IMG/VR virus record: IMGVR_UViG_3300050120_000361
Location: 62,001-126,000 of that record
DNA: 64,000 bases
Direction: 5' to 3' (one strand)
Shown here: one piece after another, positions 8,801-34,849 of the stretch
How the letters are laid out: the number at the start of each line of letters is the position of its first letter
Position numbering within the stretch: the first letter of the stretch is position 1
Position numbers and translations under genes: made by a program
The notes under the pieces: model-generated
The model's input: only the letters and a program-made list of their open reading frames with translations
Told to the model about the DNA's origin: nothing
Databases searched by the model: none

Positions 8801-8990
8801 TCAGTTGCACTGTCTGTGACTCGGGCACCTCAAGCACCTGCTCCATTTTGATTACGTCCGCGAGGTTGTTTATGAAGCCGTTCTGGCTTTGCACCTCATT
8901 CATGAAATTATACATGTTCCACTGGTCAACGCTTATCTTCTTGGCCTTCAGCTGGCTGTACTCGTTCCAGGTTATTTTCCAAACAGGCAT
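8778..8990 (-). CDS. Hypothetical protein
   Basis: 70-aa ORF translationally coupled (TGATG) to the MazG-like gene. Confidence 0.6.
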   Translation of the reverse strand: MPVWKITWNEYSQLKAKKISVDQWNMYNFMNEVQSQNGFINNLADVIKMEQVLEVPESQTVQLNGGYGNG

Positions 8991-9505: not shown

Positions 9506-9538
9506 TTTTGTGTTATCGTTTCTTATTCGTTATATTTC

Positions 9539-10042: not shown

Positions 10043-10584
10043 TCGGTTTCAATTGTTTCATAACCAAGGTTCTCTCCACGGAGTATCGCCCATCGTTTGT
10101 CCTCACGCAGGTACGGCCTCTCCACCACCCAGCAATCCATGAATTGTTCCATCAAATGGTCCGCATCCCGTAGTATAACCATTTCCTTGCGGCGCGGGTC
10201 GAGATAGTGCAGCACGTTACCAAGTTTGAGAATTCCCACCGCATGAAACATGGACGGTATCAGGCGCACGGTTAGGTGATATGGTACTATAGGGGTTTCG
10301 ACGAACAGTTCTCCTGGCGCCTCTTCCATCATCACCACGTTCCATATGTGCTCTTTTGGCAATGGTGGGTATGCAGGATTGGATTGAGTTACAAGTCCCA
10401 TTTTCAGTTCGGGAACGCTCATCAATAGCATAGCTTCCACGCGGGTCTCGTCACAGGCCTTGTAATTTGGGTCTTCGCACAGCCTCAACAGATTTTTATC
10501 CTTGAGAATGTTGGCCAACAAGTACACGGTGCACCAGCCTATGGAAGGCTGAACGTATGGTACTTCAAGTTTCAGATGCCTCAC
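10039..10584 (-). CDS. Putative papain-fold cysteine peptidase (C39-like/Josephin-like)
   Basis: LEVPYVQPSIGWC (Gln, then Cys at a helix start), FHAVGI (His), YLDP (Asp). Confidence 0.55.
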   Translation of the reverse strand: MRHLKLEVPYVQPSIGWCTVYLLANILKDKNLLRLCEDPNYKACDETRVEAMLLMSVPELKMGLVTQSNPAYPPLPKEHIWNVVMMEEAPGELFVETPIVPYHLTVRLIPSMFHAVGILKLGNVLHYLDPRRKEMVILRDADHLMEQFMDCWVVERPYLREDKRWAILRGENLGYETIETE

Positions 10585-12527: not shown

Positions 12528-12686
12528 ATCAGTCCGTTATTTCTACCTTGTAATTAATTAGTGCTTGATAAACTTTATCGGAAATTCTATCCCTATATAG
12601 CCTATTCCATACTGACTGCGCTTGAGCCTTATGTTCATTAATTCTTGATTTTATGCTGTAATTATTATATCCCAACAGTAGGCCCT
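12528..12686. promoter_or_regulatory. AT-rich intergenic region upstream of the topoisomerase gene, with palindromes
   Basis: TAATTAATTA (12551-12560), GATAAA-C-TTTATC inverted repeat (12567-12579), and CCGATAAA on the minus strand (12574-12581). Confidence 0.45.
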
Positions 12687-13133
12687 TTAAACGGGCGTTT
12701 CCACGGGCCCTTGGCCTTTCCAGCCTATGGACACCAGGTACTTTATAAGCTCTTTCTCGAGCGATACTATTTCCCTGTTGCGGAGCTGGTGCTCCCAGAC
12801 CCTAAGCACCCTGTAGCCTTTTTTGTTTAGCGCTTTTATGTGTTCTGAGTCACGTTCAACATTTCTTGCCAGTTTTGGCAACCAAAATTCAGTATTGCTC
12901 TTGGGCTACTTGTAGCACTTAGGGCATTTATGCCAGTAGCAGCCGTGCATGAATATCGCCAGGTTTAGTTCCCAAACCACCGCGTCGGGCTTTCCGGGAA
13001 GGTGTCTGGAGTGCTTCTGGTATGTCACGCCCATCCCGTCCAGTATTGCGAAGAGTCGCAGTTCGGGTTTGGTGTTTGTGGAGCCTATTTTCGACATTAT
13101 GTCGCTTCTCTTCTCCTTGGTGAACTTGTCCAT
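12687..13133 (-). pseudogene. vsr: Very-short-patch repair endonuclease Vsr, interrupted by one in-frame TAG at 12906-12908
   Basis: MDKFTKEKRSDIMSKIGSTNTKPE, LPGKPD, IFMHGCYWHKC...CYK*PKSNTEFWLPKLARNVERD...GYRVLRVWEH; both halves are in the same frame. Confidence 0.88.
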
Positions 13134-13154
13134 TCTTTTCTGGGCCAATGGTAA

Positions 13155-13186
13155 GGCCCCCTGCTCTGTTTCCAGTGCAGGGGGCC
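13155..13186 (-). terminator. Strong hairpin (terminator or RNA processing site)
   Basis: GGCCCCCTGC / GCAGGGGGCC 10-bp stem plus 3 further bp, GAAA loop on the minus strand; weak U tract. Confidence 0.55.
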
Positions 13187-13216
13187 GTTATAGGGCGTCA
13201 AAGCGCTTTTGGCTTG

Positions 13217-14332
13217 TCAGATGCCAAGGGATGACTTTATCCTGTCGTTTGTGGTGCCCTTCGGGTAGTCGTGCTGTTCGGTGTCCGGATTGGACAGGGC
13301 CGCGACAAGGCGTTCCTTCTTGTCGGATGTCATGTAGGGCGGCTCGGGCTGCTTGCTGGTTACGGCCCCACGGGCTCCGGTGCCTGAGCCGAGGAAACTC
13401 GTCTCGTATACGGTAGAGCCGTATGAGCCGCTGTAGCCGCTGTCCCCGTGAGCGGTTACGACCCCGGCGGCCGGGAGAACCTTTATCGCTCCGGTCTTCA
13501 GGTTCTTGAGCTTGAGGGCGTAGAGCGGCCACTCGCTCTCGAATGAGCGGTACTTGATCCAGCTTATCTGGTTCAGCTGGCCGCCAACCGACACCATGTC
13601 CCGGTCGGTCTCGAGAGGCTCGCGCTTGAACGAGCCGGTGTAGCCCATGCCGGCCTTGCGCCTCACGGACGTGGCCATTCCGGGCTTTCCGCTCTTTGGC
13701 ATTGTTGAAGGCTTAACGGAGTGAGCATTATCATACCCGTGCCCGAAGGATATTCCAGACCACACCTGACCGTCAAGCGCTGCCTTCATTTTTGCCCTTA
13801 CCGCTCCAGATGCCGTTGACGGAAGCCCCTGAAGGTCCTTCAATTCCTGCTCGGTGTAGCCGGTGAATATAGCCGCGAACTGCGGGTCGGAACGGAAGTC
13901 GCCCCAAACCGATGATATTAGGTCGTCCCAAGCGTCCTGTTCGACAATTATGTCCTTGTAGTCCTGGTAAGACTCGTACTTCGGGTGCTCGTCGGCGTGC
14001 ATCATTCCGCTCTCCATGACCTCGGTGTCGTTGCCGTTAGCTCCCCACACGCCGTAGTTCCCTATTATCACCCCGTTAACACCGCGCAGGAAGTCGTCGT
14101 AGTTCTCCCACAGGGTTGTGAGCTTCAGCGGTGTTCCAGCCCCCTCGTCAAGCCTGTCCATGTCGTTCAGTCTGGGACCCTCGAGTATGTCCATACTTGC
14201 CGGGAGGCCGTATGACTCGTTCACGTTGGCGCCGCACGCGTCGCAGAGCCCGCACTTCTGCTCGGCTGCGTTCGAGAGCGGTGTGTGGCACACGGAGCAC
14301 GCTCCGAATTGGTCGTTTGCTACTATCTTCAT
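13217..14332 (-). CDS. Hypothetical protein with N-terminal Zn finger, possibly an internal head protein
   Basis: CSVC...CGLCDAC; acidic N-terminal half with VNES, ILE, LWE and IVE motifs reminiscent of prohead-protease sites. Confidence 0.55.
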   Translation of the reverse strand: MKIVANDQFGACSVCHTPLSNAAEQKCGLCDACGANVNESYGLPASMDILEGPRLNDMDRLDEGAGTPLKLTTLWENYDDFLRGVNGVIIGNYGVWGANGNDTEVMESGMMHADEHPKYESYQDYKDIIVEQDAWDDLISSVWGDFRSDPQFAAIFTGYTEQELKDLQGLPSTASGAVRAKMKAALDGQVWSGISFGHGYDNAHSVKPSTMPKSGKPGMATSVRRKAGMGYTGSFKREPLETDRDMVSVGGQLNQISWIKYRSFESEWPLYALKLKNLKTGAIKVLPAAGVVTAHGDSGYSGSYGSTVYETSFLGSGTGARGAVTSKQPEPPYMTSDKKERLVAALSNPDTEQHDYPKGTTNDRIKSSLGI

Positions 14333-14336
14333 GTCC

Positions 14337-14621
14337 TTAGAGTGCTGTTAAAAATGCGTAAGCTGCGTCCATGTCCGCGAATGCCGTCCATACGTAAGGG
14401 TCCTCACCCGTTCCTGAACCGGTTCTCGTGGAGGCGTCGGCGAGGTCGGCCGGCGCCACGTTGTTCAGCACGGTGTCGCCACGCTGGGCCGCGTTGAACA
14501 CAGTGAGCGTGCCGTCGTCGTTGGGGCGCACCGCGTACTGACCCTTTGGGTAAAGGGTGGGGTACTTGTCGTTTGAGTCCTGCACGGTCAGGAAGCTCGT
14601 GGTTGTTCCTATTATCTTCAT
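14337..14621 (-). CDS. Hypothetical protein, possibly virion
   Basis: 94-aa ORF with A-rich leader directly after the terminase gene. Confidence 0.65.
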   Translation of the reverse strand: MKIIGTTTSFLTVQDSNDKYPTLYPKGQYAVRPNDDGTLTVFNAAQRGDTVLNNVAPADLADASTRTGSGTGEDPYVWTAFADMDAAYAFLTAL

Positions 14622-14638
14622 TTCGATTTATTTATTCG

Positions 14639-16603
14639 TTATAGTATGTATCCGTTTTTGTTCTTTCGCCCCCTGCCGCCGCTTGAGTTCCACATCTGCT
14701 CGTGGTTCCGAAGGTGAAAGCCAGTGGGTATCCTGTACACGTTCGCCTGGGCAACCCTTAATTTCTCCTGCTCGTCAAGAAGCTCCTGTGCTATGTCGTT
14801 GCACCGCTGACGCATGTTAGTTTCGGCGTCCGCGAGGAACTCCCTGCTGTACATGTTGCCCGACTTGACGAAATGGGCTATGGTGACGTCCACCATCACG
14901 GTATCGTCATGCCCGTACTGCGCGGCGTAGGTGTCGTTGGCGTTCTTTCCGAAGTTGAGGTACTCCTCAACCGACATGTAGTGCGTTTCGTCGAATGTCT
15001 CGTTTACTATCAGCGAAGAGAAGGACTTGACGCCGACCTTCTTGTTGTACTGGTCCCAGCGTATTCCGCGCTCGTAGTCCTCCTTGCTTGCCCGCATGAA
15101 CTTGGCGAATACGATGTTGTCGAACCACGAGTACGCCTTGTCGAACCTTACCAGGTGGTCTATGTGCGCGAAGAACTCCCCGCCGTAGTTGTTCGTCTCC
15201 ACCACGACGCGAACCTGCGAAGGGTTGAAGTACTTGAGCAGGTCGAGCGTTTTCTGAGCGAAGTCCTCAACTGAAATCTCCTTGTCCCTGAACACGCCAA
15301 TGTTCTTGAACTCTATGCGCTTTTTGGTCCTGTTCCACTCCATCTTCCGTATCTTCAGTACAGAGCTGTCCTGCCCGAGGCCTTCGGCGATGTCTATTCC
15401 CATTATGAAGTAATCCTCCATGAAGTCGTATTCGGTCCCGACCTCAACGCTCTTTCCGTCCTCGGTCTCCGCCATGAAGTGGTTGGCCTTGAACTGTATG
15501 TCGAACAGTTCCCCGAGGTAGTGGTTGTCCTTGGACCAGGCGTTCTTGTTGAGCGTCTGCTCCTGCCTCAGGGATTTCTGTATCTTGACGTTGAAAATGC
15601 TCTTCAGCTGCGTGTCGAATGAGCACTCAAAGCCCATCTCCCACGCCTCGAGGCCCACGTTGGCTATTGTGTCCTGCTTGAACGACTCGTCCCTGCCAGG
15701 AACCTCGTGCCAGTAAATCCTGCTCGATATGAACCTGTTCGTCTTCTCCTGCGAGCCGAGCCAAAGGTCGTAGAACTTGTTCCTGCCGTTCGGGGTGGAG
15801 GCTATTATGCACCTGGACTTGGGATTATTGACAAGGGCCGGGTAGATGTTGTTCCAGAACTTATCCACCTTGGACGCGGGTATGTACGCGAACTCGTCAA
15901 TGAACAGGAAGTCGAGAGAGAAGCCCTGAACCACTGACTCCGACGCGATGCCTATCGATAGCCTGCACCCGTTGTCGAGCGTGAAGCCCCTGGCGTTGAA
16001 TGATATGAAGCCGGGCTGCATGAAGAACGGGAGCCCGTTGAACGCCTCCTTGATCTTCTTGAGTATCTCGTTAACGACCATTTCGGACTGGGCCACTACG
16101 ACGCAGTCCTTATCGAAGTTGAAGCAGCAGAAGTGCACTATCTCAACCACAGTGGTTGTGGTCTTTCCCGACTGGCGGGGAAACATCAGAATGTTCCAGT
16201 TATGCGCCGCGTACTTCGCGAGCAAATCCTCCTGGTACCGGCGAAGGGCAATCTTCTGCCAGCCGTCATTACCGTCCTTGAGCTGCACGAAGTTGTTGCC
16301 GAAAAGCACCTTATCCCCCATGCACATCTCAAGCACCGCCATCTCATCCTCAGTGTACTTGAAGGGCAGGTTTCCCTTGCGGAGGTTGGCGTCCCTCACG
16401 GTCTTAAGGAACGGGGACTCCTTCAGCTTGTAGCCGTCAAGTATGCCAGACTTGGCAAGCTCAACAGACTCGCTGTTCCATACGGACCTGCTCGCCTCGT
16501 CGTTTACGATGATACGAGGGTCAAACACACCGTGGGTTCCCCCAAGCCGCTTGTTCAGCAGGTCATTGGTCCTATTTATGCGTTCCGCGGTCTCGGTGGC
16601 CAT
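14639..16603 (-). CDS. terL: Terminase large subunit (T4 gp17-like)
   Basis: LRRYQ, PRQSGKTTT (Walker A), FLFIDEFAYI (Walker B), STPNGRNKFY, nuclease GIDIAEGLGQDSS, VETNNYG, HDDTVM. Confidence 0.95.
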   Translation of the reverse strand: MATETAERINRTNDLLNKRLGGTHGVFDPRIIVNDEASRSVWNSESVELAKSGILDGYKLKESPFLKTVRDANLRKGNLPFKYTEDEMAVLEMCMGDKVLFGNNFVQLKDGNDGWQKIALRRYQEDLLAKYAAHNWNILMFPRQSGKTTTTVVEIVHFCCFNFDKDCVVVAQSEMVVNEILKKIKEAFNGLPFFMQPGFISFNARGFTLDNGCRLSIGIASESVVQGFSLDFLFIDEFAYIPASKVDKFWNNIYPALVNNPKSRCIIASTPNGRNKFYDLWLGSQEKTNRFISSRIYWHEVPGRDESFKQDTIANVGLEAWEMGFECSFDTQLKSIFNVKIQKSLRQEQTLNKNAWSKDNHYLGELFDIQFKANHFMAETEDGKSVEVGTEYDFMEDYFIMGIDIAEGLGQDSSVLKIRKMEWNRTKKRIEFKNIGVFRDKEISVEDFAQKTLDLLKYFNPSQVRVVVETNNYGGEFFAHIDHLVRFDKAYSWFDNIVFAKFMRASKEDYERGIRWDQYNKKVGVKSFSSLIVNETFDETHYMSVEEYLNFGKNANDTYAAQYGHDDTVMVDVTIAHFVKSGNMYSREFLADAETNMRQRCNDIAQELLDEQEKLRVAQANVYRIPTGFHLRNHEQMWNSSGGRGRKNKNGYIL

Positions 16604-16621
16604 TGGTGTTCAAAAATGTTT

Positions 16622-17332
16622 TTACAGGCAGTCGTCGCAATAGCCCTCAGTTACCAGGTACTCCCTGTCGAGTTCGCAGCCGCACCCAGTGCAGTACATT
16701 TCGGGGTTATCCTCGCGGTTGCGCGCCTCCTTGGAGTCGTCGTCCAGGTCTATGTCAAAAGCCTTGAGATTGCCGTTGGCGTCCCAGCCGAGGTTTCCCT
16801 CATGAAGGTCAGAAGCGCCAATCCGCCTGTACTCGAGGCTCAAAGCTACCAATTGGTGGTAGAACGACTCGACAGCGTCGGAGATTGGCTTAAGCTTTGG
16901 AGTAACTGTTTTTCTGTCGCTGCCTGAGGCTATGTTCATGGCGCGCTGTATTGCGGCCTTTTTCTGGTTGTATTCGGTGCAGAACCTCTCATAGTCGAAT
17001 TCGAAGGCATTGGGAGGGCGGACCTTTTGCGTTGCGAGCATGGTGTCAACCATTTGGAAAAGGTTGGTTATCTCATCGTCCTTCTGCAGGAAGTCCGCCA
17101 CGTAGAAGTAGAGAGACTCGTTCCTGGCAGTTGCGTGTATTCTGGCGAAGAGAGGCCACTCGCCCGTGGTCTGTTTCACAGCGAAATCGTATTCCCATTT
17201 GGACCTGGTCTGCTTGACGACAAAGCCCCCGCAGCGCCAGGCTGTTCCATTGTCGCCCGAGCCCAGCAGCGCCATATCGGGAAGACTGATGCCGTTTTCA
17301 ATCAGGAAGTTTTCAAGTGTCCGTTGTTCCAT
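16622..17332 (-). CDS. Protein kinase-like enzyme with C-terminal Zn ribbon
   Basis: LGSGDNGTAW (Gly loop), VVKQT (Lys), WEY (helix C Glu), DLHEGNLG (catalytic loop), AFDID; tail CTGCGC...CDDC. Confidence 0.75.
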   Translation of the reverse strand: MEQRTLENFLIENGISLPDMALLGSGDNGTAWRCGGFVVKQTRSKWEYDFAVKQTTGEWPLFARIHATARNESLYFYVADFLQKDDEITNLFQMVDTMLATQKVRPPNAFEFDYERFCTEYNQKKAAIQRAMNIASGSDRKTVTPKLKPISDAVESFYHQLVALSLEYRRIGASDLHEGNLGWDANGNLKAFDIDLDDDSKEARNREDNPEMYCTGCGCELDREYLVTEGYCDDCL

Positions 17333-17337
17333 AACTA

Positions 17338-17724
17338 TTATAGCATAACCAGTTCAAAGCCGTTTTCGAGCCTGTAACCGTTTCTTAGTATATCCACAAC
17401 GCCAGGCTGGATATGATACGGAAGGTACGAGTGAGCCGTCAGAAGCCTCGCGGCCAGTCCGGACATTCCCGGCAAAGCCACCCTTATCTCCATCCGCTTC
17501 GGCCTGGATATGGAAGAGTACACTGTGTCTGTAACGAAGGCGTTCCGCCCTCCTGTCCAGTTATGTATGTCCTCGCGTATGAGGAGCAATCCCTCTATTT
17601 TCTCCAATTCCGTGCAAACGTATTCGACCCCGCTTTTCCTCAAAAGGATTGCGGGGTCGAATGGTGCCTGTATGTAAAGGTCGGACCAGTGATGGTCTCC
17701 TATGGTTTCTTTGCCTACCGTCAT
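17338..17724 (-). CDS. Hypothetical protein
   Basis: 128-aa ORF coupled by ATGA overlap. Confidence 0.6.
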   Translation of the reverse strand: MTVGKETIGDHHWSDLYIQAPFDPAILLRKSGVEYVCTELEKIEGLLLIREDIHNWTGGRNAFVTDTVYSSISRPKRMEIRVALPGMSGLAARLLTAHSYLPYHIQPGVVDILRNGYRLENGFELVML

Positions 17725-18392
17725 TTCGCTATTACGTAGTCCTCCACGCGGTCTATCTGCAGGTAGGGCGTGCGGGACACTATGTGCGTCTGAACGCCAA
17801 TTACCTTATGGAAGAATATCCAAACGCGCTTGCGAAGCGTCGTGTGCGCCAGCGTTATGCTGTCGACCAGGCGAAGGTTCAAATTGGTGAGGTACGGGGA
17901 GCGTTTCGGGAACAGGTTAACGTCCACAGTGAAAGTGGCGAACCTGTCGTTGTACGCCGCCACGTACTTGCCCTCCTGTATTGTGAACCTTGAGGTGTCC
18001 GCACGGTTCTTTGCAGTCGTGTCCCTATGCGTTCCTATGCTGTCCTGGCGGAAGTCGCTGTGCGCCGCTATGGATGTGGCTGACAGCAATTGGCTCATGG
18101 TTATTCCCATGTTCTGAAGCTGCGAATTTAGGTTGGAGTTCTGCGCCTTTAGCTCATCCGTAGTCACCTGCAGGGAGGCGAGTGTGCCCTGGACCAAGCC
18201 GTCCTTGGTCTTTGTGGTATCCATCTTGAACCCACTGTTCTTAAGGGCCAGTGAGGCCCTGTCGCGGTCTGCGGCCGTCTCGTCCAATTGCTTGTGGAGA
18301 AACCACATGCCAGTAACCAATCCGGCAATGATTATCCCCATGCCCCATTTGCTCGTGATGAAGGACCACGCTCCTGTCAAAAATGTCAACAT
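17721..18392 (-). CDS. Membrane-anchored coiled-coil protein, spanin-like
   Basis: N-terminal TM (GMGIIIAGLVTGMWFL), coiled coil, then beta-rich domain with DSI...RKRVWIFF...PY; typical of Bacteroidota phage spanin-like proteins. Confidence 0.55.
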   Translation of the reverse strand: MLTFLTGAWSFITSKWGMGIIIAGLVTGMWFLHKQLDETAADRDRASLALKNSGFKMDTTKTKDGLVQGTLASLQVTTDELKAQNSNLNSQLQNMGITMSQLLSATSIAAHSDFRQDSIGTHRDTTAKNRADTSRFTIQEGKYVAAYNDRFATFTVDVNLFPKRSPYLTNLNLRLVDSITLAHTTLRKRVWIFFHKVIGVQTHIVSRTPYLQIDRVEDYVIAK

Positions 18393-18421
18393 ATCCTTAT
18401 TGTTTTGGTTTTACTTGTTCT

Positions 18422-19009
18422 TCAGAATGCCTGTACCTGCCTGGTCTTGCGCGCCTTTTCAGCAGCCTTCTCCATTTCAGCCTTGAGTCGTATCATGTCC
18501 TCACCTATCAGGTGGTTGCCAAGCCTTTGAGCCTTCTCTCCCCATTTCAGGTATTCGTAGGTCTTTTCGTCCCACATCAGAAGGGTCATAAGCTCGGCCT
18601 TTATGTGCGGCTCGAACTCCACGGCGTCCTTAGGCTTCTTTCGCTCCTTCACTCCCTCGACCTTAGCCTTCTTTGTGGACTGCTTGTAGAAGAGGTACTG
18701 CGGGACCCGCGGGCGCGTGAAGCCTGTTACGAATTTGGTCCGCTGCAACGCCTTCATTATCGCTGGGCTCTCTATCGCCTTAACGAACGGAGGAGAGTAC
18801 ATGTTCAGGACCTCGTCCGCGAGGTGCGGGAAGCCCTTGTACATGTTTATCAGCAGGGTAACAGCGAACAGCTTTATCTCATAGTGCGTGTAGTTCGCGA
18901 AGCCCTCCACGCTTGTGTAGAAGTCCGATTGGAACTTGTTCTGGAAGGTGTAGTCCTTTGCGGCCGGTGATGCGCTCATTTCATTATCGTTTTGTCGGCC
19001 TGTCGCCAT
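18422..19009 (-). CDS. Hypothetical protein, possibly clamp-loader small subunit (gp62-like)
   Basis: LLINMYKGFPHLADEVLN...RVPQYLFYKQSTKK pattern and size; start may be MSAS at ~18979. Confidence 0.35.
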   Translation of the reverse strand: MATGRQNDNEMSASPAAKDYTFQNKFQSDFYTSVEGFANYTHYEIKLFAVTLLINMYKGFPHLADEVLNMYSPPFVKAIESPAIMKALQRTKFVTGFTRPRVPQYLFYKQSTKKAKVEGVKERKKPKDAVEFEPHIKAELMTLLMWDEKTYEYLKWGEKAQRLGNHLIGEDMIRLKAEMEKAAEKARKTRQVQAF

Positions 19010-19080
19010 CTGGGTGGCACGCGCGGGTAATGGCTAATGACCGTGGCGTTCATCTCCATCAGGCGACAGGCAGGCATTTG

Positions 19081-19722
19081 TTAGTTTATGTCAGGATTAC
19101 CGGCGGCCTTGGCCCTGCGCTCCTCATTGGCTACTTTCTCCATTTCCACCATGTGCGCGTTCATCTCCACGGCGTCATGAAGCATCACGTGCGCCATCAC
19201 CATTTTTCCAATGTCGATAGGGTACATTGCCTCCATATCGATGAATATCGTCTTGGCCGCCGGCGATATTATCAGCACTGACGGCGGCGTGTCCGTAGGC
19301 ATCTTGCGCACAAGGGCGAAGGGCTCGAACAGCTTGCGATGGGTTTCAATGTCGTCGCAGTAGTAGGCCTTTGCCGGAACCACCCTGCTTATCTTGTCGA
19401 ATATTATCAGTCTGGCCTCCTCGAAAGTAGCTTCGTCCATTCCGGGTATTGGCTTGAGAGCCTTGGCCAGCAGGTCGTAGTTGTTGTGTATTCTCATGAA
19501 GCCGTCGTACTCGTCCAGCAGGTAGGCCGAATTGAAGACCGGCGTGTCAAAGAATATGAGCGTGTTCTCAGTCACGAAAAGCTCGGCGGTTTCACCCATT
19601 AGAGAAGCGGTGTCGAAAAGCCTGTCAATGTCTTCCATGGAGCGGATGCGACCTATCTTCAGTCTCTCAAGTATCTCCGCGTAGTGCGGGTTGGTTTCGT
19701 TTTGTTTGTGCGCGATTTCCAT
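19081..19722 (-). CDS. Hypothetical protein
   Basis: 213-aa ORF. Confidence 0.7.
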   Translation of the reverse strand: MEIAHKQNETNPHYAEILERLKIGRIRSMEDIDRLFDTASLMGETAELFVTENTLIFFDTPVFNSAYLLDEYDGFMRIHNNYDLLAKALKPIPGMDEATFEEARLIIFDKISRVVPAKAYYCDDIETHRKLFEPFALVRKMPTDTPPSVLIISPAAKTIFIDMEAMYPIDIGKMVMAHVMLHDAVEMNAHMVEMEKVANEERRAKAAGNPDIN

Positions 19723-19728
19723 CGTATG

Positions 19729-21036
19729 TTATGCGTTTAGTATGTCGTCTATGAATGATCTTTCCGTTACCTGCTGGTTCTGCTGGCCGGGAGCCGCGGC
19801 CTTTATCGATGGTGCCGACGAGGCTATGAGCTCCGTGGCGGAGTCAACAGTGTTCACTGAGAAGTTGAGCCTGAGCAGGTCCTGCATGCTCAGCGGCGCG
19901 AGAACCTGCTCCTTTATTGTAATCCAATGGGACTCGAACGCCTGTACCACGTGTTCCGGCAGGTACTCCTTGCGGAGCATTATTATCTTCAGGTTGTGCT
20001 TGTAATGGTTGCCGACCGACTTCTTGTCTATGGGGTCCGGCGTCTCGCCCTGGGCCTTTGCTATCAGGTTTATGAGAGTGCTCAGCTGCATGTCCTTGTC
20101 GAGGAAGAACCTCTGCGCGGTCTCTTCGCTGAGCGGCCCGTACTTCAGCTTGGCCCAAACGGCCTCAATCATCTTCTCGGTTATCTTGAAGTTCTTGCCG
20201 CCCTTCTTCCACCTGAGTATGGGGAACACGTTGTCCTTCTTGTCGCCGCATATAGTCTTGCATAGGCCGGTAAGCAGGGGCTCGGCCACCTGTATTCCCT
20301 GGCCCGGGACGCGGTTCATGTTTGAGCGCTGCCTTCCGCCGTTCAGCTGCACGCGGAACGTCCTGTCGAAATGCGTTCTGTCCTCACTGGTCTGCGTCAT
20401 CCTCGCGAGCATGTCCATAGGCTGGTCGTTTGCGAACAGCTTCTTGTATATTCCGGCCGATATGTAGAACTCGCCCTCGGGGTTCGCCTTGGAGCTTATG
20501 TTCTTGAACAGCCTAACGCGGTTGTTAACAATCTGCGACAAATCGCCGTCGCTCGCGAACATCCAAAGGTTTATGTTGTTAGCCGAGAGCTTGTCTCCGA
20601 GAAGCAGCAGTGCGTCGTCGCCTTCGCAGCCCGTGACCCTGAAGCAGGGGACGTGCGGGGCTATTCTGCCATGGAATTCCTCCATCAGCCTGTCGAACTC
20701 ATCCCAATTTATGTCAGACTCCTCCTTTATAGCAGTGCGGTTGTCCTTGTAGTTTATCGGCTCCTCGGACCCTTCAGGCAGGTAGTAGGGCCTGTAGCCT
20801 GGAATGTCCTTACGCCATGAGTGGTTGTCGAAAACGAACACAAGCCCGTCCATTAGCGTGTGGTACTCGTTATTGAACGAGGCGTATATGGATAGGAGGC
20901 TCTCGTTCAGCGCGGCCGCGAAGTTCGCGTGGTCCTGCATGCTGTTCAGCGTTATCTCGGGCTGCTTCGAACGCATGCCGTGCAGCATCCTGTGGCCGAA
21001 GTAATTCCCGTCTATGCCAAGGTAGTTTCTCTCCAT
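19729..21036 (-). CDS. 5'-3' exonuclease / T4-type RNase H (FEN family)
   Basis: GIDGN, VFD..SWRK, YKDNR, EGDD, SDGDLSQ, ICGDKKDNV. Confidence 0.9.
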   Translation of the reverse strand: MERNYLGIDGNYFGHRMLHGMRSKQPEITLNSMQDHANFAAALNESLLSIYASFNNEYHTLMDGLVFVFDNHSWRKDIPGYRPYYLPEGSEEPINYKDNRTAIKEESDINWDEFDRLMEEFHGRIAPHVPCFRVTGCEGDDALLLLGDKLSANNINLWMFASDGDLSQIVNNRVRLFKNISSKANPEGEFYISAGIYKKLFANDQPMDMLARMTQTSEDRTHFDRTFRVQLNGGRQRSNMNRVPGQGIQVAEPLLTGLCKTICGDKKDNVFPILRWKKGGKNFKITEKMIEAVWAKLKYGPLSEETAQRFFLDKDMQLSTLINLIAKAQGETPDPIDKKSVGNHYKHNLKIIMLRKEYLPEHVVQAFESHWITIKEQVLAPLSMQDLLRLNFSVNTVDSATELIASSAPSIKAAAPGQQNQQVTERSFIDDILNA

Positions 21037-21063
21037 TGTCTTCTTTTGTTATTTCCGTTATCG

Positions 21064-21145
21064 TACGCGGGATGGGACTCGAACCCACACACCTATTGGC
21101 ACCGCCCCCTCAAAGCGGCTCGTCTACCAGTTTCGACACCCGCGC
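21064..21145 (-). tRNA. tRNA-Leu(GAG)
   Basis: GCGCGGG/CCCGCGT acceptor stem, D-loop TGGTAGAC, anticodon arm CCGCT-TTGAGGG-GGCGG, long variable arm, GGTTCGAGTCC; CCA not encoded. Confidence 0.92.
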
Positions 21146-21170
21146 GTAATTTCATGCATATCCCCGGCCA

Positions 21171-22484
21171 CTACCAAACCATAAGCTGGTTGTACTTGTT
21201 GCCGAAATTCGCTATCAGCTCCCTCTTTATGAGCTTGAGGCAGGCGTCCGCGTCATGCATGCTCTTGCTCGCGAGCCTTGCGGCCTCATCGATTTTCTTT
21301 CCCTTGTAGACCAGTGCCTCAAAGACAACCTTCATCCAACCGGCCTTGTACTCGAGGTTCTTCTTCATGAAGGCCTTGAACTCCTCATCGATTTCAATGA
21401 TGTCCGCGTGGGCCTTTTCCGGAGCAATGCCCATTCGCTCCTCAATGCTTGCAACCTTGGACTTTGCGCCATTCGCTGAAACGGCCATGTTCTTGGCCAA
21501 TCCGTAAATCCAGGACATGAACCGCTCATTGTCTGAATAGAAATCGAGCTGCTTCTCCCTTGGCAGCCATGACTCGAGCTCCTCATACATTTGCGCCATT
21601 GCGAGGTCCATGTCCCAACCCCTTATTTCCGCAACGCCCTTTACCGATATGCGTATGCGCCTGTAGTTGCGCGTGCACATAGCCTTAAGCCCGTGGGCCG
21701 GGTCGCTCGCCCGGTACCTCAGCGAGAAAGGCAGCGTGGACGCCTCTTCGACCTCCTCTCCCTTTGCCCGCTCACCGTACTTTTTGACCACCGGCCTGCC
21801 GTTATTGAAGTGGCTGTCGGCTGGGTCAATGCTGTTCTGCTTCTCCACACGCCTGCGCAGCTTGTCTTTCAGGTCCTGTGCGGTTTTTATCTTTTTAGGT
21901 TCTTTGAATTCCTTGACCTTTTTAACCTTGGGTTCTTTAGGCGGCTTGGGAGTCCACGGCTTGTCGTCGCTTATGTACCATCCACTATTGTCTGACCTGA
22001 ACTTCCTGTCAAGGTCAATCAGCATTATGCCGTAAAGTGCGGCGAGTTTGGTTATGGAGTCCCGCTTGCCCTTTGACGTTCCAGCCTCTATGGCGTATAT
22101 GTTCTTGTCACTCGTCCCTGTCGCGTCAACGGCGGCCTGCAGCGGCTTCAGAAGGTAAAGCCTTATGTTCTTGGCGTTCCTCAGGAAGTCGTCAACGAGC
22201 ATGGCGTCCTGAAATATGAAGTTGTCTTCAGGTCTCTGAACCTTCCTTATGCCTCGAGAATTTCCGGACTTGGAGACCTCCTTGTGCGGTTTCGGCTCCT
22301 TGGGCTTAAGGTCTCGGAGCTTCAACTGCCTGGTGGTTATGCCCAATGTTTCCGGGGAAACGTCGGGGAAAGCGTTTTTGTTCAGTATGCTCAACATGCG
22401 CCTGGTATCCTTAACCTCTTTGGCAAGAATTGCAAGCCTCTCCTCGAGGAAATTGCGCATGGTATCCGTGGTGCTCTTTGCCAT
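21171..22484 (-). CDS. XRE-HTH + ECF-type sigma70 factor fusion
   Basis: XRE: NIRLYL..LQAAVDATGTSDKNIYAIEAG...SITKLAALYG. Sigma region 2: ERFMSWIYGLAKNMA. Region 4: VFEALVYKGKKIDEAARLA...CLKLIKREL. Confidence 0.6.
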   Translation of the reverse strand: MAKSTTDTMRNFLEERLAILAKEVKDTRRMLSILNKNAFPDVSPETLGITTRQLKLRDLKPKEPKPHKEVSKSGNSRGIRKVQRPEDNFIFQDAMLVDDFLRNAKNIRLYLLKPLQAAVDATGTSDKNIYAIEAGTSKGKRDSITKLAALYGIMLIDLDRKFRSDNSGWYISDDKPWTPKPPKEPKVKKVKEFKEPKKIKTAQDLKDKLRRRVEKQNSIDPADSHFNNGRPVVKKYGERAKGEEVEEASTLPFSLRYRASDPAHGLKAMCTRNYRRIRISVKGVAEIRGWDMDLAMAQMYEELESWLPREKQLDFYSDNERFMSWIYGLAKNMAVSANGAKSKVASIEERMGIAPEKAHADIIEIDEEFKAFMKKNLEYKAGWMKVVFEALVYKGKKIDEAARLASKSMHDADACLKLIKRELIANFGNKYNQLMVW

Positions 22485-22497: not shown

Positions 22498-22665
22498 TTA
22501 CTTTGTTGTCATTGGGCACTGAGACTCAAAGCCTGTGATGGGCCCTATGCCGGAACCGGAAAGATTGCACTCGGAACCAGGCGAGCAGCACTCGTCACCG
22601 CATTGGAGCTTTGTAACCGGGCACGTGTTGTCTTCACCCACGATAAGTTTTTCATTGTTTTCCAT
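22498..22665 (-). CDS. 55-aa six-cysteine micro-protein (C-C-CC-C-C pattern)
   Basis: Manual translation MENNEKLIVGEDNTCPVTKLQCGDECCSPGSECNLSGSGIGPITGFESQCPMTTK*; fills the gap between flanking genes; below the ORF-track size cutoff. Confidence 0.65.
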   Translation of the reverse strand: MENNEKLIVGEDNTCPVTKLQCGDECCSPGSECNLSGSGIGPITGFESQCPMTTK

Positions 22666-22903
22666 GTAAGTCTATATTTCTTTTTAGGTGGTTCTTTTGC
22701 AAGTCGTCAATGGGCATCGTCTTTTCAATCGGGCCGAGGCCTGCGATGCAGGCGTCCGCTATTTTTCTCGCGAGTTTTGGGTTAACCGAGGTTTCCACAA
22801 AATCCTCGAGGAAATCCAGCTGGCTCCTGCGAAGCCTTTTTCTGAAATCGTGAATGAATTCCTCGAACGCCTTTTCGCGGGATATGTCTAATTCTTCCGG
22901 CAC
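22652..22903 (-). CDS. Hypothetical protein
   Basis: Likely GTG start at 22903, just after the kinase stop (track ORF 22652..23035). Confidence 0.55.
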   Translation of the reverse strand: MPEELDISREKAFEEFIHDFRKRLRRSQLDFLEDFVETSVNPKLARKIADACIAGLGPIEKTMPIDDLQKNHLKRNIDLHGKQ

Positions 22904-22907
22904 GGCA

Positions 22908-23612
22908 CTACCCCTTATGTGTGTCGCGTGGCGCGAGCCACTTGTCCAATACCATGTCGACAAATTCAACGAGCTGTTCGCCGGTGCACTTCTCGGGAGG
23001 AGATGCCACGGTAACGTCAGGCGAAAGCTTTTCAATGAATTCGAGACGTTCGCCCTTTGTCATTGAGCCGTTGAACACCACCACCATCCTCTCGCCATAG
23101 TCCAGCATGTTCGAAAGCTCCACTATTGTGCCGTTATCGAACATGTTGTTTTCTGTGAAGTGGTCCGCCTTGCGGAACTCATCCGTTGTGCGCTCAAGGA
23201 ATATGCCAACCCAATTGGCGTCAAGCAGAACTATAGCCTCATCCTTAGTGCGCACGTCCTCCACCACTATTGGGTTTTCGGGGTCGTCCACTATCGTAAG
23301 GTCGAAGCTCTCGTGTGCCGCTATCAGCGCTGTGCGGTTCAATGAGCCGTGCTGGTTGCCGAGCATTTGGCTTACCTCATGGTGCTTGAGCCTGACGGCA
23401 GGGTCTTTGCGCTTCCGCTCCTCAAGCTCGTCCGGCGTCACGCCCAAATCCTCGCATATTATCTGCTTTATAGTCCCCGCTATTCGCATCTTGCGCATGC
23501 CGTAGTACGAGTGCAGAAAGCTCGCCACAGTGGATTTGCCGCTGCCGGTCAGACCGGCCACGAACATGTCCACGTACTCGGGGTTTCGCTTTGTGGTAGT
23601 GTCTCTATTCAT
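22908..23612 (-). CDS. Deoxynucleoside monophosphate kinase (T4 gp1-like)
   Basis: AGLTGSGKSTVA, IAGTIKQI, VVEDVRTKDE, HFTE. Confidence 0.8.
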   Translation of the reverse strand: MNRDTTTKRNPEYVDMFVAGLTGSGKSTVASFLHSYYGMRKMRIAGTIKQIICEDLGVTPDELEERKRKDPAVRLKHHEVSQMLGNQHGSLNRTALIAAHESFDLTIVDDPENPIVVEDVRTKDEAIVLLDANWVGIFLERTTDEFRKADHFTENNMFDNGTIVELSNMLDYGERMVVVFNGSMTKGERLEFIEKLSPDVTVASPPEKCTGEQLVEFVDMVLDKWLAPRDTHKG

Positions 23613-24649: not shown

Positions 24650-25591
24650 TTATCTGAATATCGAGCGCAGTGCCGAAATGCACGCGAAGAATGTGCCGAA
24701 CTTGTTTATGGTGGTCACGTACCTGAACGAGTAGTCGCAGACTATCGCGGCAGCCTTCATGGTGTGCTCGTACTTGCCCTGGCTGTTAAGCCATGTGAAG
24801 TACGGCTCTCCAAGGGATATTAGACACTCGCGCTCCTTGCCCTTGTAGGCGCTCACGGCCTCGTAGAACTTCTGCGCCTCGGCGTTGGACTGTATCAGCT
24901 CGTAGAGCTCCACGTTGGCCGTTCCGTTTTCGGACAGTATAACCACATTGTCCTCGGTAACGTCCCGCTTGCTGTCTATGAATTGCTGCAGTATCACGAG
25001 CAAGTGCCTGAAGTCCGGAAAGTTCATCTGGTATATGAGCTTCAGGCCGCGGTTGTCATACCTGATGTTGTTCTCGTTGCATATGCGTACGGCGTACGAT
25101 ATGTACTTCTTCTGCTGCTCGGTTATCTCCTGGCCCTGGTAAGAGTACTCAACGTTCACGCAGCGCGACTTTATGGCGGAGTTGACGGTTTCTGGCTCGT
25201 TGGTGTTGAACACGAAGTTCACGCTCTTGGCGGTGTCCAGCACGACCTTGAAACCGTCCTGTATCTTGTTGGCAACGTTCTCGCACTCGTCAACGATGAG
25301 GGACTTCTGCCTGCCGAGCACTGAGTGCCCTGACACGAATGGGTACACCTTCTGGCGCATCACCTCCACGTTGAAGTCGTTCGAACCGGACAGGTACAGA
25401 ACGTCGTGCCCGAGCGTAAGGAGCTTGGCCGTGGATGTCTTGCCGGTTCCGGGAGGCCCGTGCTGGAAAAGCCGCCACCCCCTCGCGTCCGTTGTTGTGT
25501 TGGTCAGGAGGGTCTCTATCCTGTTTGGCAGGTAGAGGTCTTTGAGGGATTTCGGGGAATATATCTCAAGCAGTGTCTTCTTTTCGCTCAT
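24650..25591 (-). CDS. Sliding clamp loader AAA+ subunit (T4 gp44/RFC-like)
   Basis: LEIYSPKSL, HGPPGTGKTS, IVDECE, NTN, IKSRC, FPDFRH. Confidence 0.92.
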   Translation of the reverse strand: MSEKKTLLEIYSPKSLKDLYLPNRIETLLTNTTTDARGWRLFQHGPPGTGKTSTAKLLTLGHDVLYLSGSNDFNVEVMRQKVYPFVSGHSVLGRQKSLIVDECENVANKIQDGFKVVLDTAKSVNFVFNTNEPETVNSAIKSRCVNVEYSYQGQEITEQQKKYISYAVRICNENNIRYDNRGLKLIYQMNFPDFRHLLVILQQFIDSKRDVTEDNVVILSENGTANVELYELIQSNAEAQKFYEAVSAYKGKERECLISLGEPYFTWLNSQGKYEHTMKAAAIVCDYSFRYVTTINKFGTFFACISALRSIFR

Positions 25592-28379: not shown

Positions 28380-28470
28380 TGTTATCTGTTTTATCTTTTA
28401 TTGATTGATTTGCTTTGTGCATAGTAATTCAATCCCGCGGCAAGGCGCGGGCATAGGGCATGTTCGGATT

Positions 28471-31635: not shown

Positions 31636-31881
31636 TTATTCGTTCTTAGTCTCGTAGCAGTCAGAGCACATGTCGTCCTCATCCGACCAGCAATCAACCC
31701 CATACCAACAGCCGCAGGTCTCGCAGTGGAATGTAGTATTGTTTATAAAGTCCCAATCCTCGCCTGCAAAGTCCAATGAATTCATGCCAGGCCAGAGCGT
31801 GTCCAGGCACGAGTCGAGAGTGTCGCATGAGCCATCAAGGGTTTCGCAGAGCGCGTTCGCGTCGAAGCCGGGATGTCTCAT
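31636..31881 (-). CDS. Small acidic Zn-ribbon protein
   Basis: CETCGCW...CSDC; ATG overlaps the UvsW stop (TGATG). Confidence 0.65.
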   Translation of the reverse strand: MRHPGFDANALCETLDGSCDTLDSCLDTLWPGMNSLDFAGEDWDFINNTTFHCETCGCWYGVDCWSDEDDMCSDCYETKNE

Positions 31882-34759: not shown

Positions 34760-34849
34760 GATTGAAAAATTAATGAATTTGTTTGAAATTTGATTGAAGA
34801 TTATTGAAACTTTTATTGAACTTATATGTTATCCGAAACCTATGCGCGG

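What the first reader, a model, noticed from the sequence alone, without database searches (positions are those of the whole stretch)
21171..22484. XRE DNA-binding domain fused to an ECF-like sigma factor
Seen: 437 aa with an N-terminal coiled coil, an XRE-type HTH, K/P/E-rich linkers, then sigma region 2- and region 4-like segments. Known: phage and ECF sigmas are normally ~170-250 aa with no separate repressor-type HTH. Inference: a sigma tethered to operator DNA, acting as a one-protein activator-sigma for a phage temporal gene class.
Basis: partly seen in the sequence, partly recalled or inferred. Interest (0 to 1): 0.65.

Follow-up and report, generated by a model that had tools for sequence, protein, structure and literature searches.

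The report
Phage sigma factor with built-in XRE domain
A 208-kb phage, probably of Bacteroidota, encodes a protein in which a repressor-type (XRE) DNA-binding domain is joined by a long flexible linker to a complete ECF-type sigma factor; this is a rare, undescribed layout, and it may let one protein both find a DNA site and recruit the host RNA polymerase.

Summary

**Direct family scans.** The protein itself matches nothing in Pfam or PHROGs, and only two chance-level models in NCBIfam.

**Relatives.** An exhaustive search found nine representatives. They carry XRE helix-turn-helix, Sigma70_r2 and Sigma70_r4_2 matches above Pfam cut-offs.

**Profiles.**
- Family profiles match solved ECF sigmas (SigW, 2e-6) and XRE regulators (2e-3).
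- hhalign gives 96.9% to a bona fide ECF sigma, across sigma2 to sigma4.

**Structure.** An alignment-based AlphaFold model shows five parts:
- an N-terminal long helix;
- a confident XRE domain (pLDDT above 90);
- an 85-residue Lys/Pro-rich linker;
- sigma2;
- sigma4.

**Genome context.**
- It is a T4-like jumbo phage with no detectable RNA polymerase, MotA or AsiA.
- A separate gp55-like late sigma lies elsewhere.
- The gene sits among replication genes.

**Reading.** I take it to be a phage alternative sigma for host polymerase with an extra DNA-binding module, probably for a non-late gene class. RNAP binding, DNA binding by the XRE domain and the target promoters are all untested. A candidate two-block promoter motif exists but is not linked to this protein.

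**Verdict.** New variant of a known kind; interest about 0.6. In some relatives the two halves are separate ORFs with a junction that resembles translational bypassing.

The parts
21171..22484 (-). Whole CDS of the XRE-sigma fusion protein (437 aa plus stop; protein P0001)
   Evidence: ORF list and translation. Nine homologous representatives, E 6e-71 to 3e-5. Single copy in the 208.5-kb genome.
22374..22481 (-). N-terminal long amphipathic helix (residues 2-37), a possible coiled coil or oligomerisation element
   Evidence: AF2 helix 2-37 with block pLDDT 92-95. Hydrophobic repeat pattern. Conserved at the N-terminus of all relatives that have an N-part. Oligomerisation itself was not tested.
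22221..22373 (-). Linker 1 (residues 38-88), Lys/Pro-rich and predicted disordered
   Evidence: pLDDT about 40-45. Composition 12 K/R, 7 D/E and 6 P in 50 residues. Length varies among relatives.
21990..22220 (-). XRE (Cro/C1-type) helix-turn-helix domain (residues about 89-165)
   Evidence: pLDDT 91-97. VIA-align Z 6.4-7.3 with rmsd 1.9-3 A over 58-65 residues to ComR DBD, CylR2, P22 c2 and DdrO. Foldseek probability 0.97-1.0. Family profile against PDB XRE regulators, E 2e-3. The aligned region of homologues P0002 and P0004 scores above the Pfam cut-off for HTH_19 or HTH_3. The target region alone gives only HTH_19 at E 0.18.
21735..21989 (-). Linker 2 (residues 166-250), Lys/Pro/Glu-rich tether between the XRE domain and sigma2. 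It contains one short conserved basic helix (about residues 202-219).
   Evidence: 22 K/R, 15 D/E and 8 P in residues 171-250. pLDDT is mostly below 60, except for helix 202-219.
21480..21734 (-). Sigma region 2-like domain (residues about 251-335) with the family's invariant D-x-E-x-F-x-x-W motif
   Evidence: AF2 helices 266-288, 292-306 and 319-331, pLDDT about 79-87. hhalign of the family's sigma part against a bona fide ECF sigma gives 96.9% probability, E 1.4e-10, with 142 columns that start in sigma2. The relative L011:5889-6491 scores 25.2 bits on Pfam Sigma70_r2, above the cut-off of 24. The F, W and N of the motif align with SigW region 2.3/2.4.
21396..21479 (-). Short sigma2-sigma4 linker (residues 336-363); there is no sigma3 domain
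   Evidence: pLDDT about 31-52. Profile alignments to SigW and SigH run straight from region 2 into region 4.
21174..21395 (-). Sigma region 4-like HTH domain (residues 364-437), including a family-invariant C-terminal tail F-G-x-K-Y-x-x-L
   Evidence: VIA-align Z 8.1 with rmsd 2.8 A over 63/63 residues to M. tuberculosis SigD region 4. Z 6.6-6.9 to sigmaE region 4 and SigH. Homologue P0004 scores 27.4 bits on Pfam Sigma70_r4_2, above the cut-off of 25.7. The invariant residues F181, K184, Y185 and L188 of alignment A2 correspond to residues 427-434.

Best explanation
The gene encodes a phage alternative sigma factor of the ECF (group 4) type: sigma2 plus sigma4, with no sigma1.1 or sigma3. 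Its N-terminus carries a long helix and a Cro/C1 (XRE)-type DNA-binding domain, joined to the sigma module by a flexible Lys/Pro-rich tether of about 85 residues. The phage is a 208.5-kb T4-like jumbo phage, probably infecting Bacteroidota, with no detectable RNA polymerase of its own. The proposed mechanism is as follows. The gene is expressed together with the replication genes. The protein binds host core RNA polymerase through sigma2 (beta-prime clamp helices) and sigma4 (beta flap), and directs it to phage promoters of a non-late class. The XRE domain gives a third, sequence-specific DNA contact at a site upstream of, or near, those promoters. It would act as a dimer through the N-terminal helix, or as a tandem pair in relatives that carry two XRE domains. 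That contact raises local concentration and specificity, so the protein would be an activator and a sigma in one polypeptide. What is shown: the ORF, its conservation, its domain architecture and its genomic context. What is inferred: RNAP binding, DNA binding, and which promoters and temporal class it serves.
For: Architecture. Nine relatives were found by exhaustive HMMER search. Relatives carry Pfam XRE HTH, Sigma70_r2 and Sigma70_r4_2 matches above cut-off. The profile matches PDB SigW at 1.8e-5 and 2.3e-6, also SigH and sigmaE, and XRE regulators at 2e-3. A bona fide ECF sigma was recovered at E 1e-5 against 5.8 billion proteins, and hhalign gives it 96.9%. The AF2 model has mean pLDDT 73.9, with confident XRE, sigma2 and sigma4 domains. 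Fold matches go only to XRE and sigma proteins. ESM Atlas feature neighbours are sigma clusters, including one with HTH_3 plus Sigma70_r2.

Need for a sigma. No match was found to RNA_pol_Rpb2_6 (PF00562) or to the single-subunit RNA_pol family (PF00940); the PF00940 search has no working control. There is no MotA or AsiA. The only other sigma-like gene is a 121-aa gp55-like late sigma, which has sigma2 only. This protein is therefore the only phage product found that has both a -35-reading and a -10-reading domain.

Context. The gene lies in an unbroken minus-strand run with the clamp loader, dNMP kinase and RNase H/5'-3' exonuclease. This order is conserved in the closest relative.

The XRE part matters. 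It is kept in all full-length relatives and is duplicated in two of them (P0002, P0004). It is kept next to the sigma ORF even where the two halves are separate ORFs.

Candidate targets. A two-block motif, CCCTATA-N15-GGGATAT, is found 19 times in the genome against 1.4 in shuffles, and 28 against 0.7 with a PWM. Most sites are intergenic and 15-60 nt before gene starts. In the window there are 4 sites against 0.41 expected. The canonical Bacteroidota -7 box is depleted, 53 against 89.
Against: The protein itself gives no match in Pfam or PHROGs and only chance-level NCBIfam rows, so all domain calls are transitive or structural. Z-scores of 7-8 for small helical domains are within the range of common arrangements (note). 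No result shows binding to RNA polymerase: the complex prediction with B. thetaiotaomicron beta-prime 180-420 gave no answer. No result ties the motif to this sigma. The best motif copies lie in the 5.6-22.5 kb region of small genes, which could be early genes read by host sigma. The motif was not found in the relatives' loci. The cultured relatives by terminase (PAU, PTm1, pT24, MA9V-1) lack a detectable homologue, so the protein is not essential to this phage group. The host assignment is indirect.
Confidence: 0.6

Rival explanations
1. It is an ordinary ECF-type phage sigma, and the N-terminal helix plus XRE domain is regulatory rather than DNA-binding. The N-part could be an autoinhibitory or pro-domain, a docking site for a phage or host partner, or an oligomerisation module. 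It would control when the sigma is active, as the N-terminal extensions of BldN or SigC do in ECF groups.
For: The N-terminal ECF extensions described so far act as regulators, not DNA binders (PMC7826278, read). The target's own XRE region is too diverged for Pfam (E 0.18). No palindromic operator was found upstream of the gene family. A conserved 55-aa Cys-rich ORF lies directly upstream and could be a partner.
Against: The fold is a confident canonical five-helix XRE DNA-binding domain. Relatives score above Pfam cut-offs for HTH_3 or HTH_19, and two of them carry a tandem pair, which is typical of DNA-binding use.
Confidence: 0.2
2. The sigma-like module is not a working sigma. It would be a decoy or sequestering module, as in PhyR-type sigma mimics. 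Alternatively it would be a core-RNAP blocker used for host shut-off. The XRE domain would then be the real DNA-binding output, that is, a repressor.
For: The sigma part is highly diverged and has no direct Pfam hit. The PhyR sigma-like domain appears among the fold matches. RNAP binding is unsupported.
Against: The profile alignments are collinear with working ECF sigmas from region 2 through region 4 and keep the region 2.3/2.4 aromatic and Asn positions. There is no receiver domain and no recognisable anti-sigma partner. The phage has no other two-domain sigma and no polymerase of its own.
Confidence: 0.12
3. The fusion is an artefact: two adjacent genes, an XRE regulator and a sigma, were merged by an assembly or sequencing error.
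For: In four related contigs the two halves are separate ORFs.
Against: Five further fused representatives (P0002-P0006) come from independent JGI, ENA, NCBI and Logan samples. Four of them are full-length (411-613 aa) with the same domain order; P0006 (314 aa) ends within sigma2. The window ORF is open for 437 codons with a conserved linker.
Confidence: 0.02

Closest known systems
ECF (group 4) sigma factors, e.g. B. subtilis SigW, M. tuberculosis SigH, E. coli sigmaE
   Same: Two-domain sigma2-sigma4 core with a short linker. Profile matches at E 2e-6 to 1e-4, collinear from region 2.3 to region 4.2. hhalign gives 96.9% to an annotated ECF sigma. Sigma4 superposes on SigD and sigmaE region 4.
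   Different: It has a 250-residue N-terminal extension with a helix, an XRE HTH and Lys/Pro linkers. It has no recognisable anti-sigma gene. It has an extra invariant C-terminal tail. It is too diverged for Pfam on its own. The ECF reclassification describes N-terminal extensions as rare, short and regulatory, and did not capture phage ECFs (PMC7826278).
T4 MotA/AsiA sigma appropriation (middle transcription)
   Same: Same functional idea: a sequence-specific DNA-binding activator is physically coupled to a sigma so that host polymerase reads phage promoters with a non-host upstream element. Both occur in a T4-like replication-gene context.
   Different: There is no homology: MotA_activ and AsiA are absent from the genome. 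Here the coupling would be covalent, and the sigma is the phage's own. This is an analogy from general knowledge of T4, not a tested relationship.
T4 gp55 (with gp33 and gp45), the late sigma of T4-like and group 2 jumbo phages
   Same: Phage-encoded sigma used with host polymerase. Group 2 jumbo phages lack a polymerase and all encode sigma factors (PMC7824862).
   Different: gp55 is a minimal sigma2-only protein. This genome has its own gp55-like gene elsewhere (G000 180639-181004; phrog_234, E 4.5e-7), and the target matches no PHROG. The jumbo-phage survey describes a minimal type and an RpoD-like type of sigma, not an XRE fusion.
Uncharacterised ESM Atlas cluster with HTH_3 plus Sigma70_r2 (about 337 aa, 56 members, Pseudomonadota)
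   Same: Apparently the same domain combination. It is among the top three feature neighbours, score 0.92.
   Different: This is a lead only. There is no alignment or E-value, and only 161 of 256 features are shared. It is shorter, bacterial or unknown in origin, and I found no literature on it.
XRE/Cro-C1 regulators (P22 c2, 434 Cro, DdrO, ComR DNA-binding domain)
   Same: Five-helix HTH fold, Z about 7 with rmsd 2-3 A over about 60 residues. Profile E 2e-3.
   Different: Here the domain is embedded in a sigma factor rather than joined to a dimerisation or sensor domain. Operator binding is untested.

Membership tests
Sigma-70 family, ECF (group 4) | Sigma region 2 domain (Pfam Sigma70_r2) | tested here: met
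   Met at family level. Relative L011:5889-6491 scores 25.2 bits, above the cut-off of 24; P0007 scores 22.5 bits. hhalign of family alignment A2 against ECF sigma P0013 gives 96.9%, E 1.4e-10, starting in region 2. AF2 shows a three-helix sigma2 core with pLDDT about 80-87. The target alone has no Pfam hit.
Sigma-70 family, ECF (group 4) | Sigma region 4 HTH domain (Pfam Sigma70_r4 or r4_2) | tested here: met
   P0004 scores 27.4 bits, above the cut-off of 25.7. The PDB profile hits span region 4. VIA Z 8.1 with rmsd 2.8 A over 63/63 residues to SigD region 4. Atlas sigma4-only cluster: TM 0.69, rmsd 2.1.
Sigma-70 family, ECF (group 4) | No sigma1.1 or sigma3; short sigma2-sigma4 linker | tested here: met
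   About 28 low-confidence residues (336-363) lie between the two domains. Alignments to SigW and SigH are collinear without an inserted domain. No Sigma70_r3 signal in any family member.
Sigma-70 family, ECF (group 4) | Binds core RNA polymerase (beta-prime clamp helices, beta flap) | tested here: inconclusive
   Complex prediction with RPOC_BACTN 180-420 scored 0.00, verdict 'no answer', which is not evidence either way.
Sigma-70 family, ECF (group 4) | Confers promoter-specific initiation at cognate -35 and -10 elements | not testable with these tools
   A candidate motif, CCCTATA-N15-GGGATAT, exists, but nothing links it to this protein.
XRE (Cro/C1-type) HTH DNA-binding domain | Five-helix HTH fold with matching sequence profile (Pfam HTH_3, HTH_19, HTH_31) | tested here: met
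   Fold: pLDDT above 90, Foldseek probability 0.97-1.0, VIA Z about 7. Sequence: relatives P0002 (HTH_19 33.4 bits, HTH_3 32.5 bits) and P0004 (HTH_19 31.5 bits) are above cut-off in the aligned region. Profile against PDB XRE gives 2e-3. The target region alone gives only E 0.18.
XRE (Cro/C1-type) HTH DNA-binding domain | Sequence-specific operator binding, usually as a dimer | not testable with these tools
   There is only indirect support: the N-terminal helix and the tandem XRE domains in two relatives. No palindromic operator was found upstream of the family's genes.
T4 gp55-type late sigma | Match to the gp55 / late sigma family (phrog_234) | tested here: not met
   The target has no PHROG match. 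A different 121-aa gene of the same genome matches phrog_234 at E 4.5e-7.
T4 MotA/AsiA middle-transcription system | Homology to MotA_activ (PF09114) or AsiA (PF09010) | tested here: not met
   Neither family is found in the complete 208.5-kb genome at E up to 10. The resemblance is functional only.
PhyR-type sigma mimic | Sigma-like domain fused to a receiver domain, acting through an anti-sigma partner | tested here: not met
   No receiver domain appears in any scan or in the model. The PhyR sigma-like domain appears only as one of many sigma4 fold matches.

The most novel reading that the evidence does not exclude
The protein would be a self-contained activator-sigma. Its XRE domain would dock on upstream boxes, for example the CCGGTGCGC boxes that sit 14-40 nt upstream of several promoter-like sites in the phage's control region. 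The 85-residue tether would let sigma4 and sigma2 engage CCCTATA-N15-GGGATAT promoters at variable distance. The phage would thereby run its programme without canonical host-type promoters. In related phages the same locus would make both an XRE-only product and the XRE-sigma fusion, through a short translational hop across an Ala-TAG...Ala junction. That would give a built-in competitor-to-activator ratio.
Probability: 0.15. Interest if true: 0.85.

Novelty: new variant of a known kind. Interest (0 to 1): 0.6.

Why it matters
Sigma factors and sequence-specific activators are normally separate proteins, and phages that need both use elaborate arrangements such as T4 MotA with AsiA. A covalent XRE-sigma would be a new solution to promoter switching. 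It would extend the known ECF architectures, whose N-terminal extensions are so far short regulatory peptides. It would also offer a compact orthogonal transcription part for Bacteroidota, where genetic tools are limited. The family is rare (nine 50%-identity clusters among 1.84 billion representatives) and confined to uncultured phage contigs, so it has escaped the ECF and jumbo-phage surveys. The split relatives add a possible new case of programmed bypassing that can be tested with a simple reporter.

Tried and rejected
- **Direct family scans** of the protein: none in Pfam or PHROGs; in NCBIfam only two chance-level rows, FlhF and a Sec-independent translocase model, far below their cut-offs.
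- **tblastn and megablast** against 50,697 phage records: no match.
- **Word-index protein searches** with the protein and with alignment A1: nothing new. With A2 the search added P0012 and one ECF sigma.
- **phmmer against PDB** with the single sequence: nothing.
- **Single-sequence AF2:** useless, pLDDT 36.9.
- **The search for related loci in IMG/VR:** A1 had no conserved block. With A2, 61 pattern hits were found and none was confirmed.
- **Profile A2 in cultured relatives:** no match in PAU, PTm1, pT24 or MA9V-1. Two weak generic sigma-like hits in a 635-kb uncultured phage.
- **Complex prediction** of the sigma part with B. thetaiotaomicron beta-prime 180-420: no answer, not evidence either way (the first try found the machine busy).
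- **Sigma-70-type promoter and terminator scan** around the gene: at or below chance.
- **Canonical Bacteroidota TTTG/TAnnTTTG promoters:** not enriched, in fact depleted.
- **Promoter motif in relatives' loci:** the CCCTATA...GGGATAT motif was absent.
- **Shared palindromic operator** upstream of the family's genes: none.
- **Genome-wide TAG reassignment** in the split relatives: rejected. ORF lengths hardly change and TAG is simply a rare stop. No alternative genetic code is proposed.
- **The 127-aa ORF at window 22652-23035** overlaps the dNMP kinase gene and has no counterpart in L004, so it is probably not a gene.
- **Literature searches** for XRE-sigma fusions found no description.
Full report
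**1. The observation**

The stated coordinates hold a 437-codon ORF, but on the minus strand (ATG at 22484, stop at 21171-21173). The plus strand is closed by several stops. The ORF is the longest in its neighbourhood. It lies in an unbroken run of minus-strand genes.

- a long amphipathic helix, residues 2-37;
- a Lys/Pro-rich disordered stretch, residues 38-88;
- a compact helical domain, about residues 89-165;
- a second, longer Lys/Pro/Glu-rich stretch, residues 166-250, with 22 K/R, 15 D/E and 8 P in residues 171-250;
- two further helical domains, about residues 251-335 and 364-437.

**2. What the domains are**

The protein itself is too diverged for direct family assignment.
- Pfam and PHROGs give nothing.
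- NCBIfam gives only two chance-level rows.
- Nothing came from tblastn against 50,697 phage records, from the word-index search, or from phmmer against PDB.

An exhaustive HMMER search of 1.84 billion cluster representatives found nine relatives.
- Five cover both halves of the protein, at E 6e-71 to 5e-40 and 31-40% identity.
- Three are sigma-only.
- One is N-part only.

These relatives carry the domains in recognisable form.
- P0002 and P0004 score above Pfam cut-offs for XRE-type HTH families (HTH_19, HTH_3), exactly where they align to target residues about 89-165. Each has two such domains.
- P0004 scores above cut-off for Sigma70_r4_2.
- The full sigma ORF of locus L011 scores above cut-off for Sigma70_r2.

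Profile searches agree.
- A profile of the whole family matches solved ECF sigmas (SigW 1.8e-5, SigH, sigmaE) and XRE regulators (2e-3 to 4e-3) in the two expected places.
- The sigma part alone improves SigW to 2.3e-6.
- It also recovers an annotated ECF sigma from 5.8 billion proteins at E 1e-5.
- hhalign aligns that ECF sigma over 142 columns, from region 2 to the end of region 4, at 96.9% probability.

With a 15-row alignment, AlphaFold2 gives mean pLDDT 73.9. The XRE domain is at 91-97, sigma2 at about 80-87 and sigma4 at about 83-91.

Fold matches fall into two classes only.
- XRE proteins at residues 98-161: ComR, CylR2, P22 c2, DdrO and 434 Cro, with VIA Z about 7.
- Sigma proteins at residues 364-430: SigD region 4 with Z 8.1, also sigmaE and SigH.
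- The ESM Atlas searches agree.

Z-scores of 7-8 for small helical domains would not be convincing on their own. Their weight comes from agreement with the sequence profiles.

**3. Genome and context**

The window is bases 62001-126000 of a 208,538-bp virus record with direct terminal repeats, rated complete. Genes run leftward over about 0-106 kb and rightward over about 106-206 kb.

The target's neighbours are T4-type replication and packaging genes:
- clamp loader, 24650-25591;
- dNMP kinase, 22908-23612;
- RNase H/5'-3' exonuclease, 19729-21036;
- topoisomerase II, 10581-12527;
- helicase, 31881-33401;
- large terminase, 14639-16603;
- a tRNA-Leu immediately downstream, 21063-21145.

In the closest relative (L004, sigma 40% identical) the order dNMP kinase, sigma, RNase H is kept. 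Its RNase H is 57% identical to the window's.

The terminase is nearest to those of jumbo phages PAU, Tenacibaculum PTm1/PTm5/pT24 and Chryseobacterium MA9V, and to 635-642-kb uncultured phages. Only 27 of 229 ORFs have a Shine-Dalgarno-like sequence. Both facts point to a Bacteroidota host. This is an inference. PAU's recorded host is Sphingomonas; from memory, it was later re-identified as Sphingobacterium.

Searches of the genome for the rest of a transcription apparatus gave the following.
- No match to RNA_pol_Rpb2_6.
- No match to the single-subunit polymerase family, although that search had no positive control.
- No MotA and no AsiA.
- Only one copy of this sigma family.
- A separate 121-aa gp55-like late sigma at G000 180639-181004.

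This fits the 'group 2' jumbo phages, which lack a polymerase and rely on their own sigma factors (PMC7824862).

**4. Most likely mechanism**

I read the protein as a phage alternative sigma for host core polymerase that also carries a DNA-binding module.

A gp55-like late sigma exists separately, and this gene sits with the replication genes. Its target class is therefore more likely a middle or other non-late class. This is inferred, not shown.

Several observations argue that the XRE part is functionally coupled to the sigma part:
- it is kept in every full-length relative;
- it is doubled in two of them;
- it stays adjacent to the sigma ORF even where the two halves are separate ORFs.

The long Lys/Pro tether would allow contact with a site at variable distance from the promoter.

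**5. Candidate promoters**

A candidate promoter class exists.
- The motif CCCTATA-N15-GGGATAT occurs 19 times against 1.4 in shuffles.
- A PWM built from it gives 28 hits against 0.7.
- Most sites are intergenic and lie 15-60 nt before starts. Strong copies also carry a downstream ATAAGA block.
- Four copies lie in the window against 0.41 expected. One, at 28431-28457, heads the gene run that contains the sigma gene.

In the region G000 5.7-9.3 kb, fifteen CCGGTGCGC boxes cluster. They often form divergent pairs 78-80 nt apart, and several lie 14-40 nt upstream of such promoter-like sites. The canonical Bacteroidota -7 box is depleted.

None of this is tied to the protein by any result.
- The strongest sites lie among small leftmost genes that could equally be early genes.
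- The motif is absent from the relatives' loci.

The attempt to support RNAP binding by complex prediction gave no answer. No sequencing runs could be obtained.

**6. Comparison with what is known**

By homology the C-terminal half belongs to the ECF branch of the sigma-70 family: sigma2 and sigma4 are met, and there is no sigma3.

RNAP binding and promoter-specific initiation, the functional hallmarks, are untested. I therefore file it as an ECF-type sigma by sequence and fold, with function inferred. The middle domain is an XRE/Cro-C1 HTH by fold and family profile.

It is not a gp55 homologue and not a MotA/AsiA homologue. The resemblance to sigma appropriation is functional only.

The 2021 ECF reclassification says that N-terminal extensions are uncommon, short and regulatory (BldN, SigC, SigR'). 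It also says that phage ECFs were not captured (PMC7826278). The jumbo-phage survey lists minimal and RpoD-like sigmas only. Four literature searches found no XRE-sigma fusion.

An ESM Atlas cluster with HTH_3 plus Sigma70_r2 suggests the combination also exists in bacteria, but this is only a lead.

**7. Novelty and verdict**

- This is a new variant of a known kind, in a rare family. Cultured relatives by terminase lack it.
- Interest is about 0.6. A transcription specialist would find the layout unexpected, and it is directly testable in vitro.

**8. A side finding in the relatives**

In four contigs of three lineages (L006/L007, L008, L010/L011) the N-part and the sigma part are separate, differently framed ORFs. 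In every case the N-part ends with an Ala codon followed by TAG. A synonymous Ala codon in the sigma frame follows 2, 5 or 7 nt later. Conserved sigma2 residues then come before any canonical start codon.

This geometry recalls matched take-off and landing codons with a stop after take-off, as in T4 gene 60 (PMC5462505). A count under alternative stop sets gave no sign of codon reassignment, and I propose no alternative code. This is not in the window and remains unexplained.

**9. Operators' notes**

No reads were laid. No sequence was altered or joined.

Noticed in passing
Loci L006:440-560, L007:430-540, L008:10740-10900, L010:9825-9900, L011:5855-5930 (relatives, not the window): In four related contigs the XRE part and the sigma part are separate ORFs in different frames. 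Each N-part ends with an Ala codon followed by TAG. A synonymous Ala codon in the sigma frame lies 2, 5 or 7 nt further on (GCG TA GCA; GCG TAGTT GCA; GCT TAGATAG GCT). Conserved sigma2 residues precede any canonical start codon. This looks like a short translational hop or bypass that would yield both an XRE-only product and the XRE-sigma fusion. Genome-wide TAG recoding was not supported.
   Followed up: partly
window 22498-22665 (-): A 55-aa Cys-rich ORF lies directly upstream of the sigma gene. It is conserved in the closest relative (L004:2150-2326; 44% identity over 43 aa, E 2e-13), keeps the positions of four Cys, and has no Pfam match. It could be a small metal-binding partner or regulator of the sigma; this is speculation.
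   Followed up: partly
window 28431-28457 (-), 34830-34856 (-), 38059-38085 (-), 40881-40906 (+); strongest copies at G000 5665-22460: A two-block promoter-like motif, CCCTATA-N15-GGGATAT, often with a downstream ATAAGA. Genome-wide there are 19 pattern hits against 1.4 in shuffles, and 28 PWM hits against 0.7. Most are intergenic and 15-60 nt before gene starts. Which sigma reads it is unknown.
   Followed up: partly
G000 5700-9300 (outside the window; locus L012:1200-4800): Fifteen CCGGTGCGC boxes cluster here, many as divergent pairs 78-80 nt apart within repeats of about 424 nt. The region has few convincing ORFs and a strand switch. Several boxes lie 14-40 nt upstream of the promoter-like motif. 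It could be a control region, an operator array or an origin.
   Followed up: partly
G000 180639-181004 (+) (outside the window; locus L002:1381-1746): A 121-aa gp55-like late sigma (phrog_234, E 4.5e-7; weak Sigma70_r2) lies in the structural-gene arm, so the phage has two sigma-like proteins. A-rich motifs such as TAAATA, ATAGATA and GATAACA are enriched before plus-strand genes and may mark late promoters.
   Followed up: partly
window 21063-21145 (-) and 37361-37432 (-): tRNA-Leu(GAG) lies immediately downstream of the sigma gene, between it and the RNase H gene. tRNA-Gln(TTG) lies further on.
   Followed up: no
whole genome G000: Only 27 of 229 ORFs have a Shine-Dalgarno-like sequence, and leaders are A-rich (TAAGAAACAAA recurs). 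The canonical Bacteroidota -7 box TAnnTTTG is depleted (53 against about 89 in shuffles), with only 2 copies within 100 nt of a gene start. The phage seems to lack host-type promoters.
   Followed up: partly
window residues 427-437 of the protein = 21174-21206 (-): The extreme C-terminal tail F-G-x-K-Y-x-x-L-(I/M) is invariant across the family and better conserved than most of sigma4. Ordinary ECF sigmas have no counterpart. Its role is unknown; it could be a docking peptide.
   Followed up: no
window 52604-59407 (+) and 62888-64000+ (+): Two giant ORFs of 2267 aa and 3040 aa (the second runs on to G000 134010) lie in a GC-richer part (58-60%) of the structural arm. They were not annotated here.
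   Followed up: no
window 22652-23035 (-): A 127-aa TTG-start ORF overlaps the dNMP kinase gene by 128 nt and has no counterpart in the syntenic relative. It is probably not a gene.
   Followed up: yes
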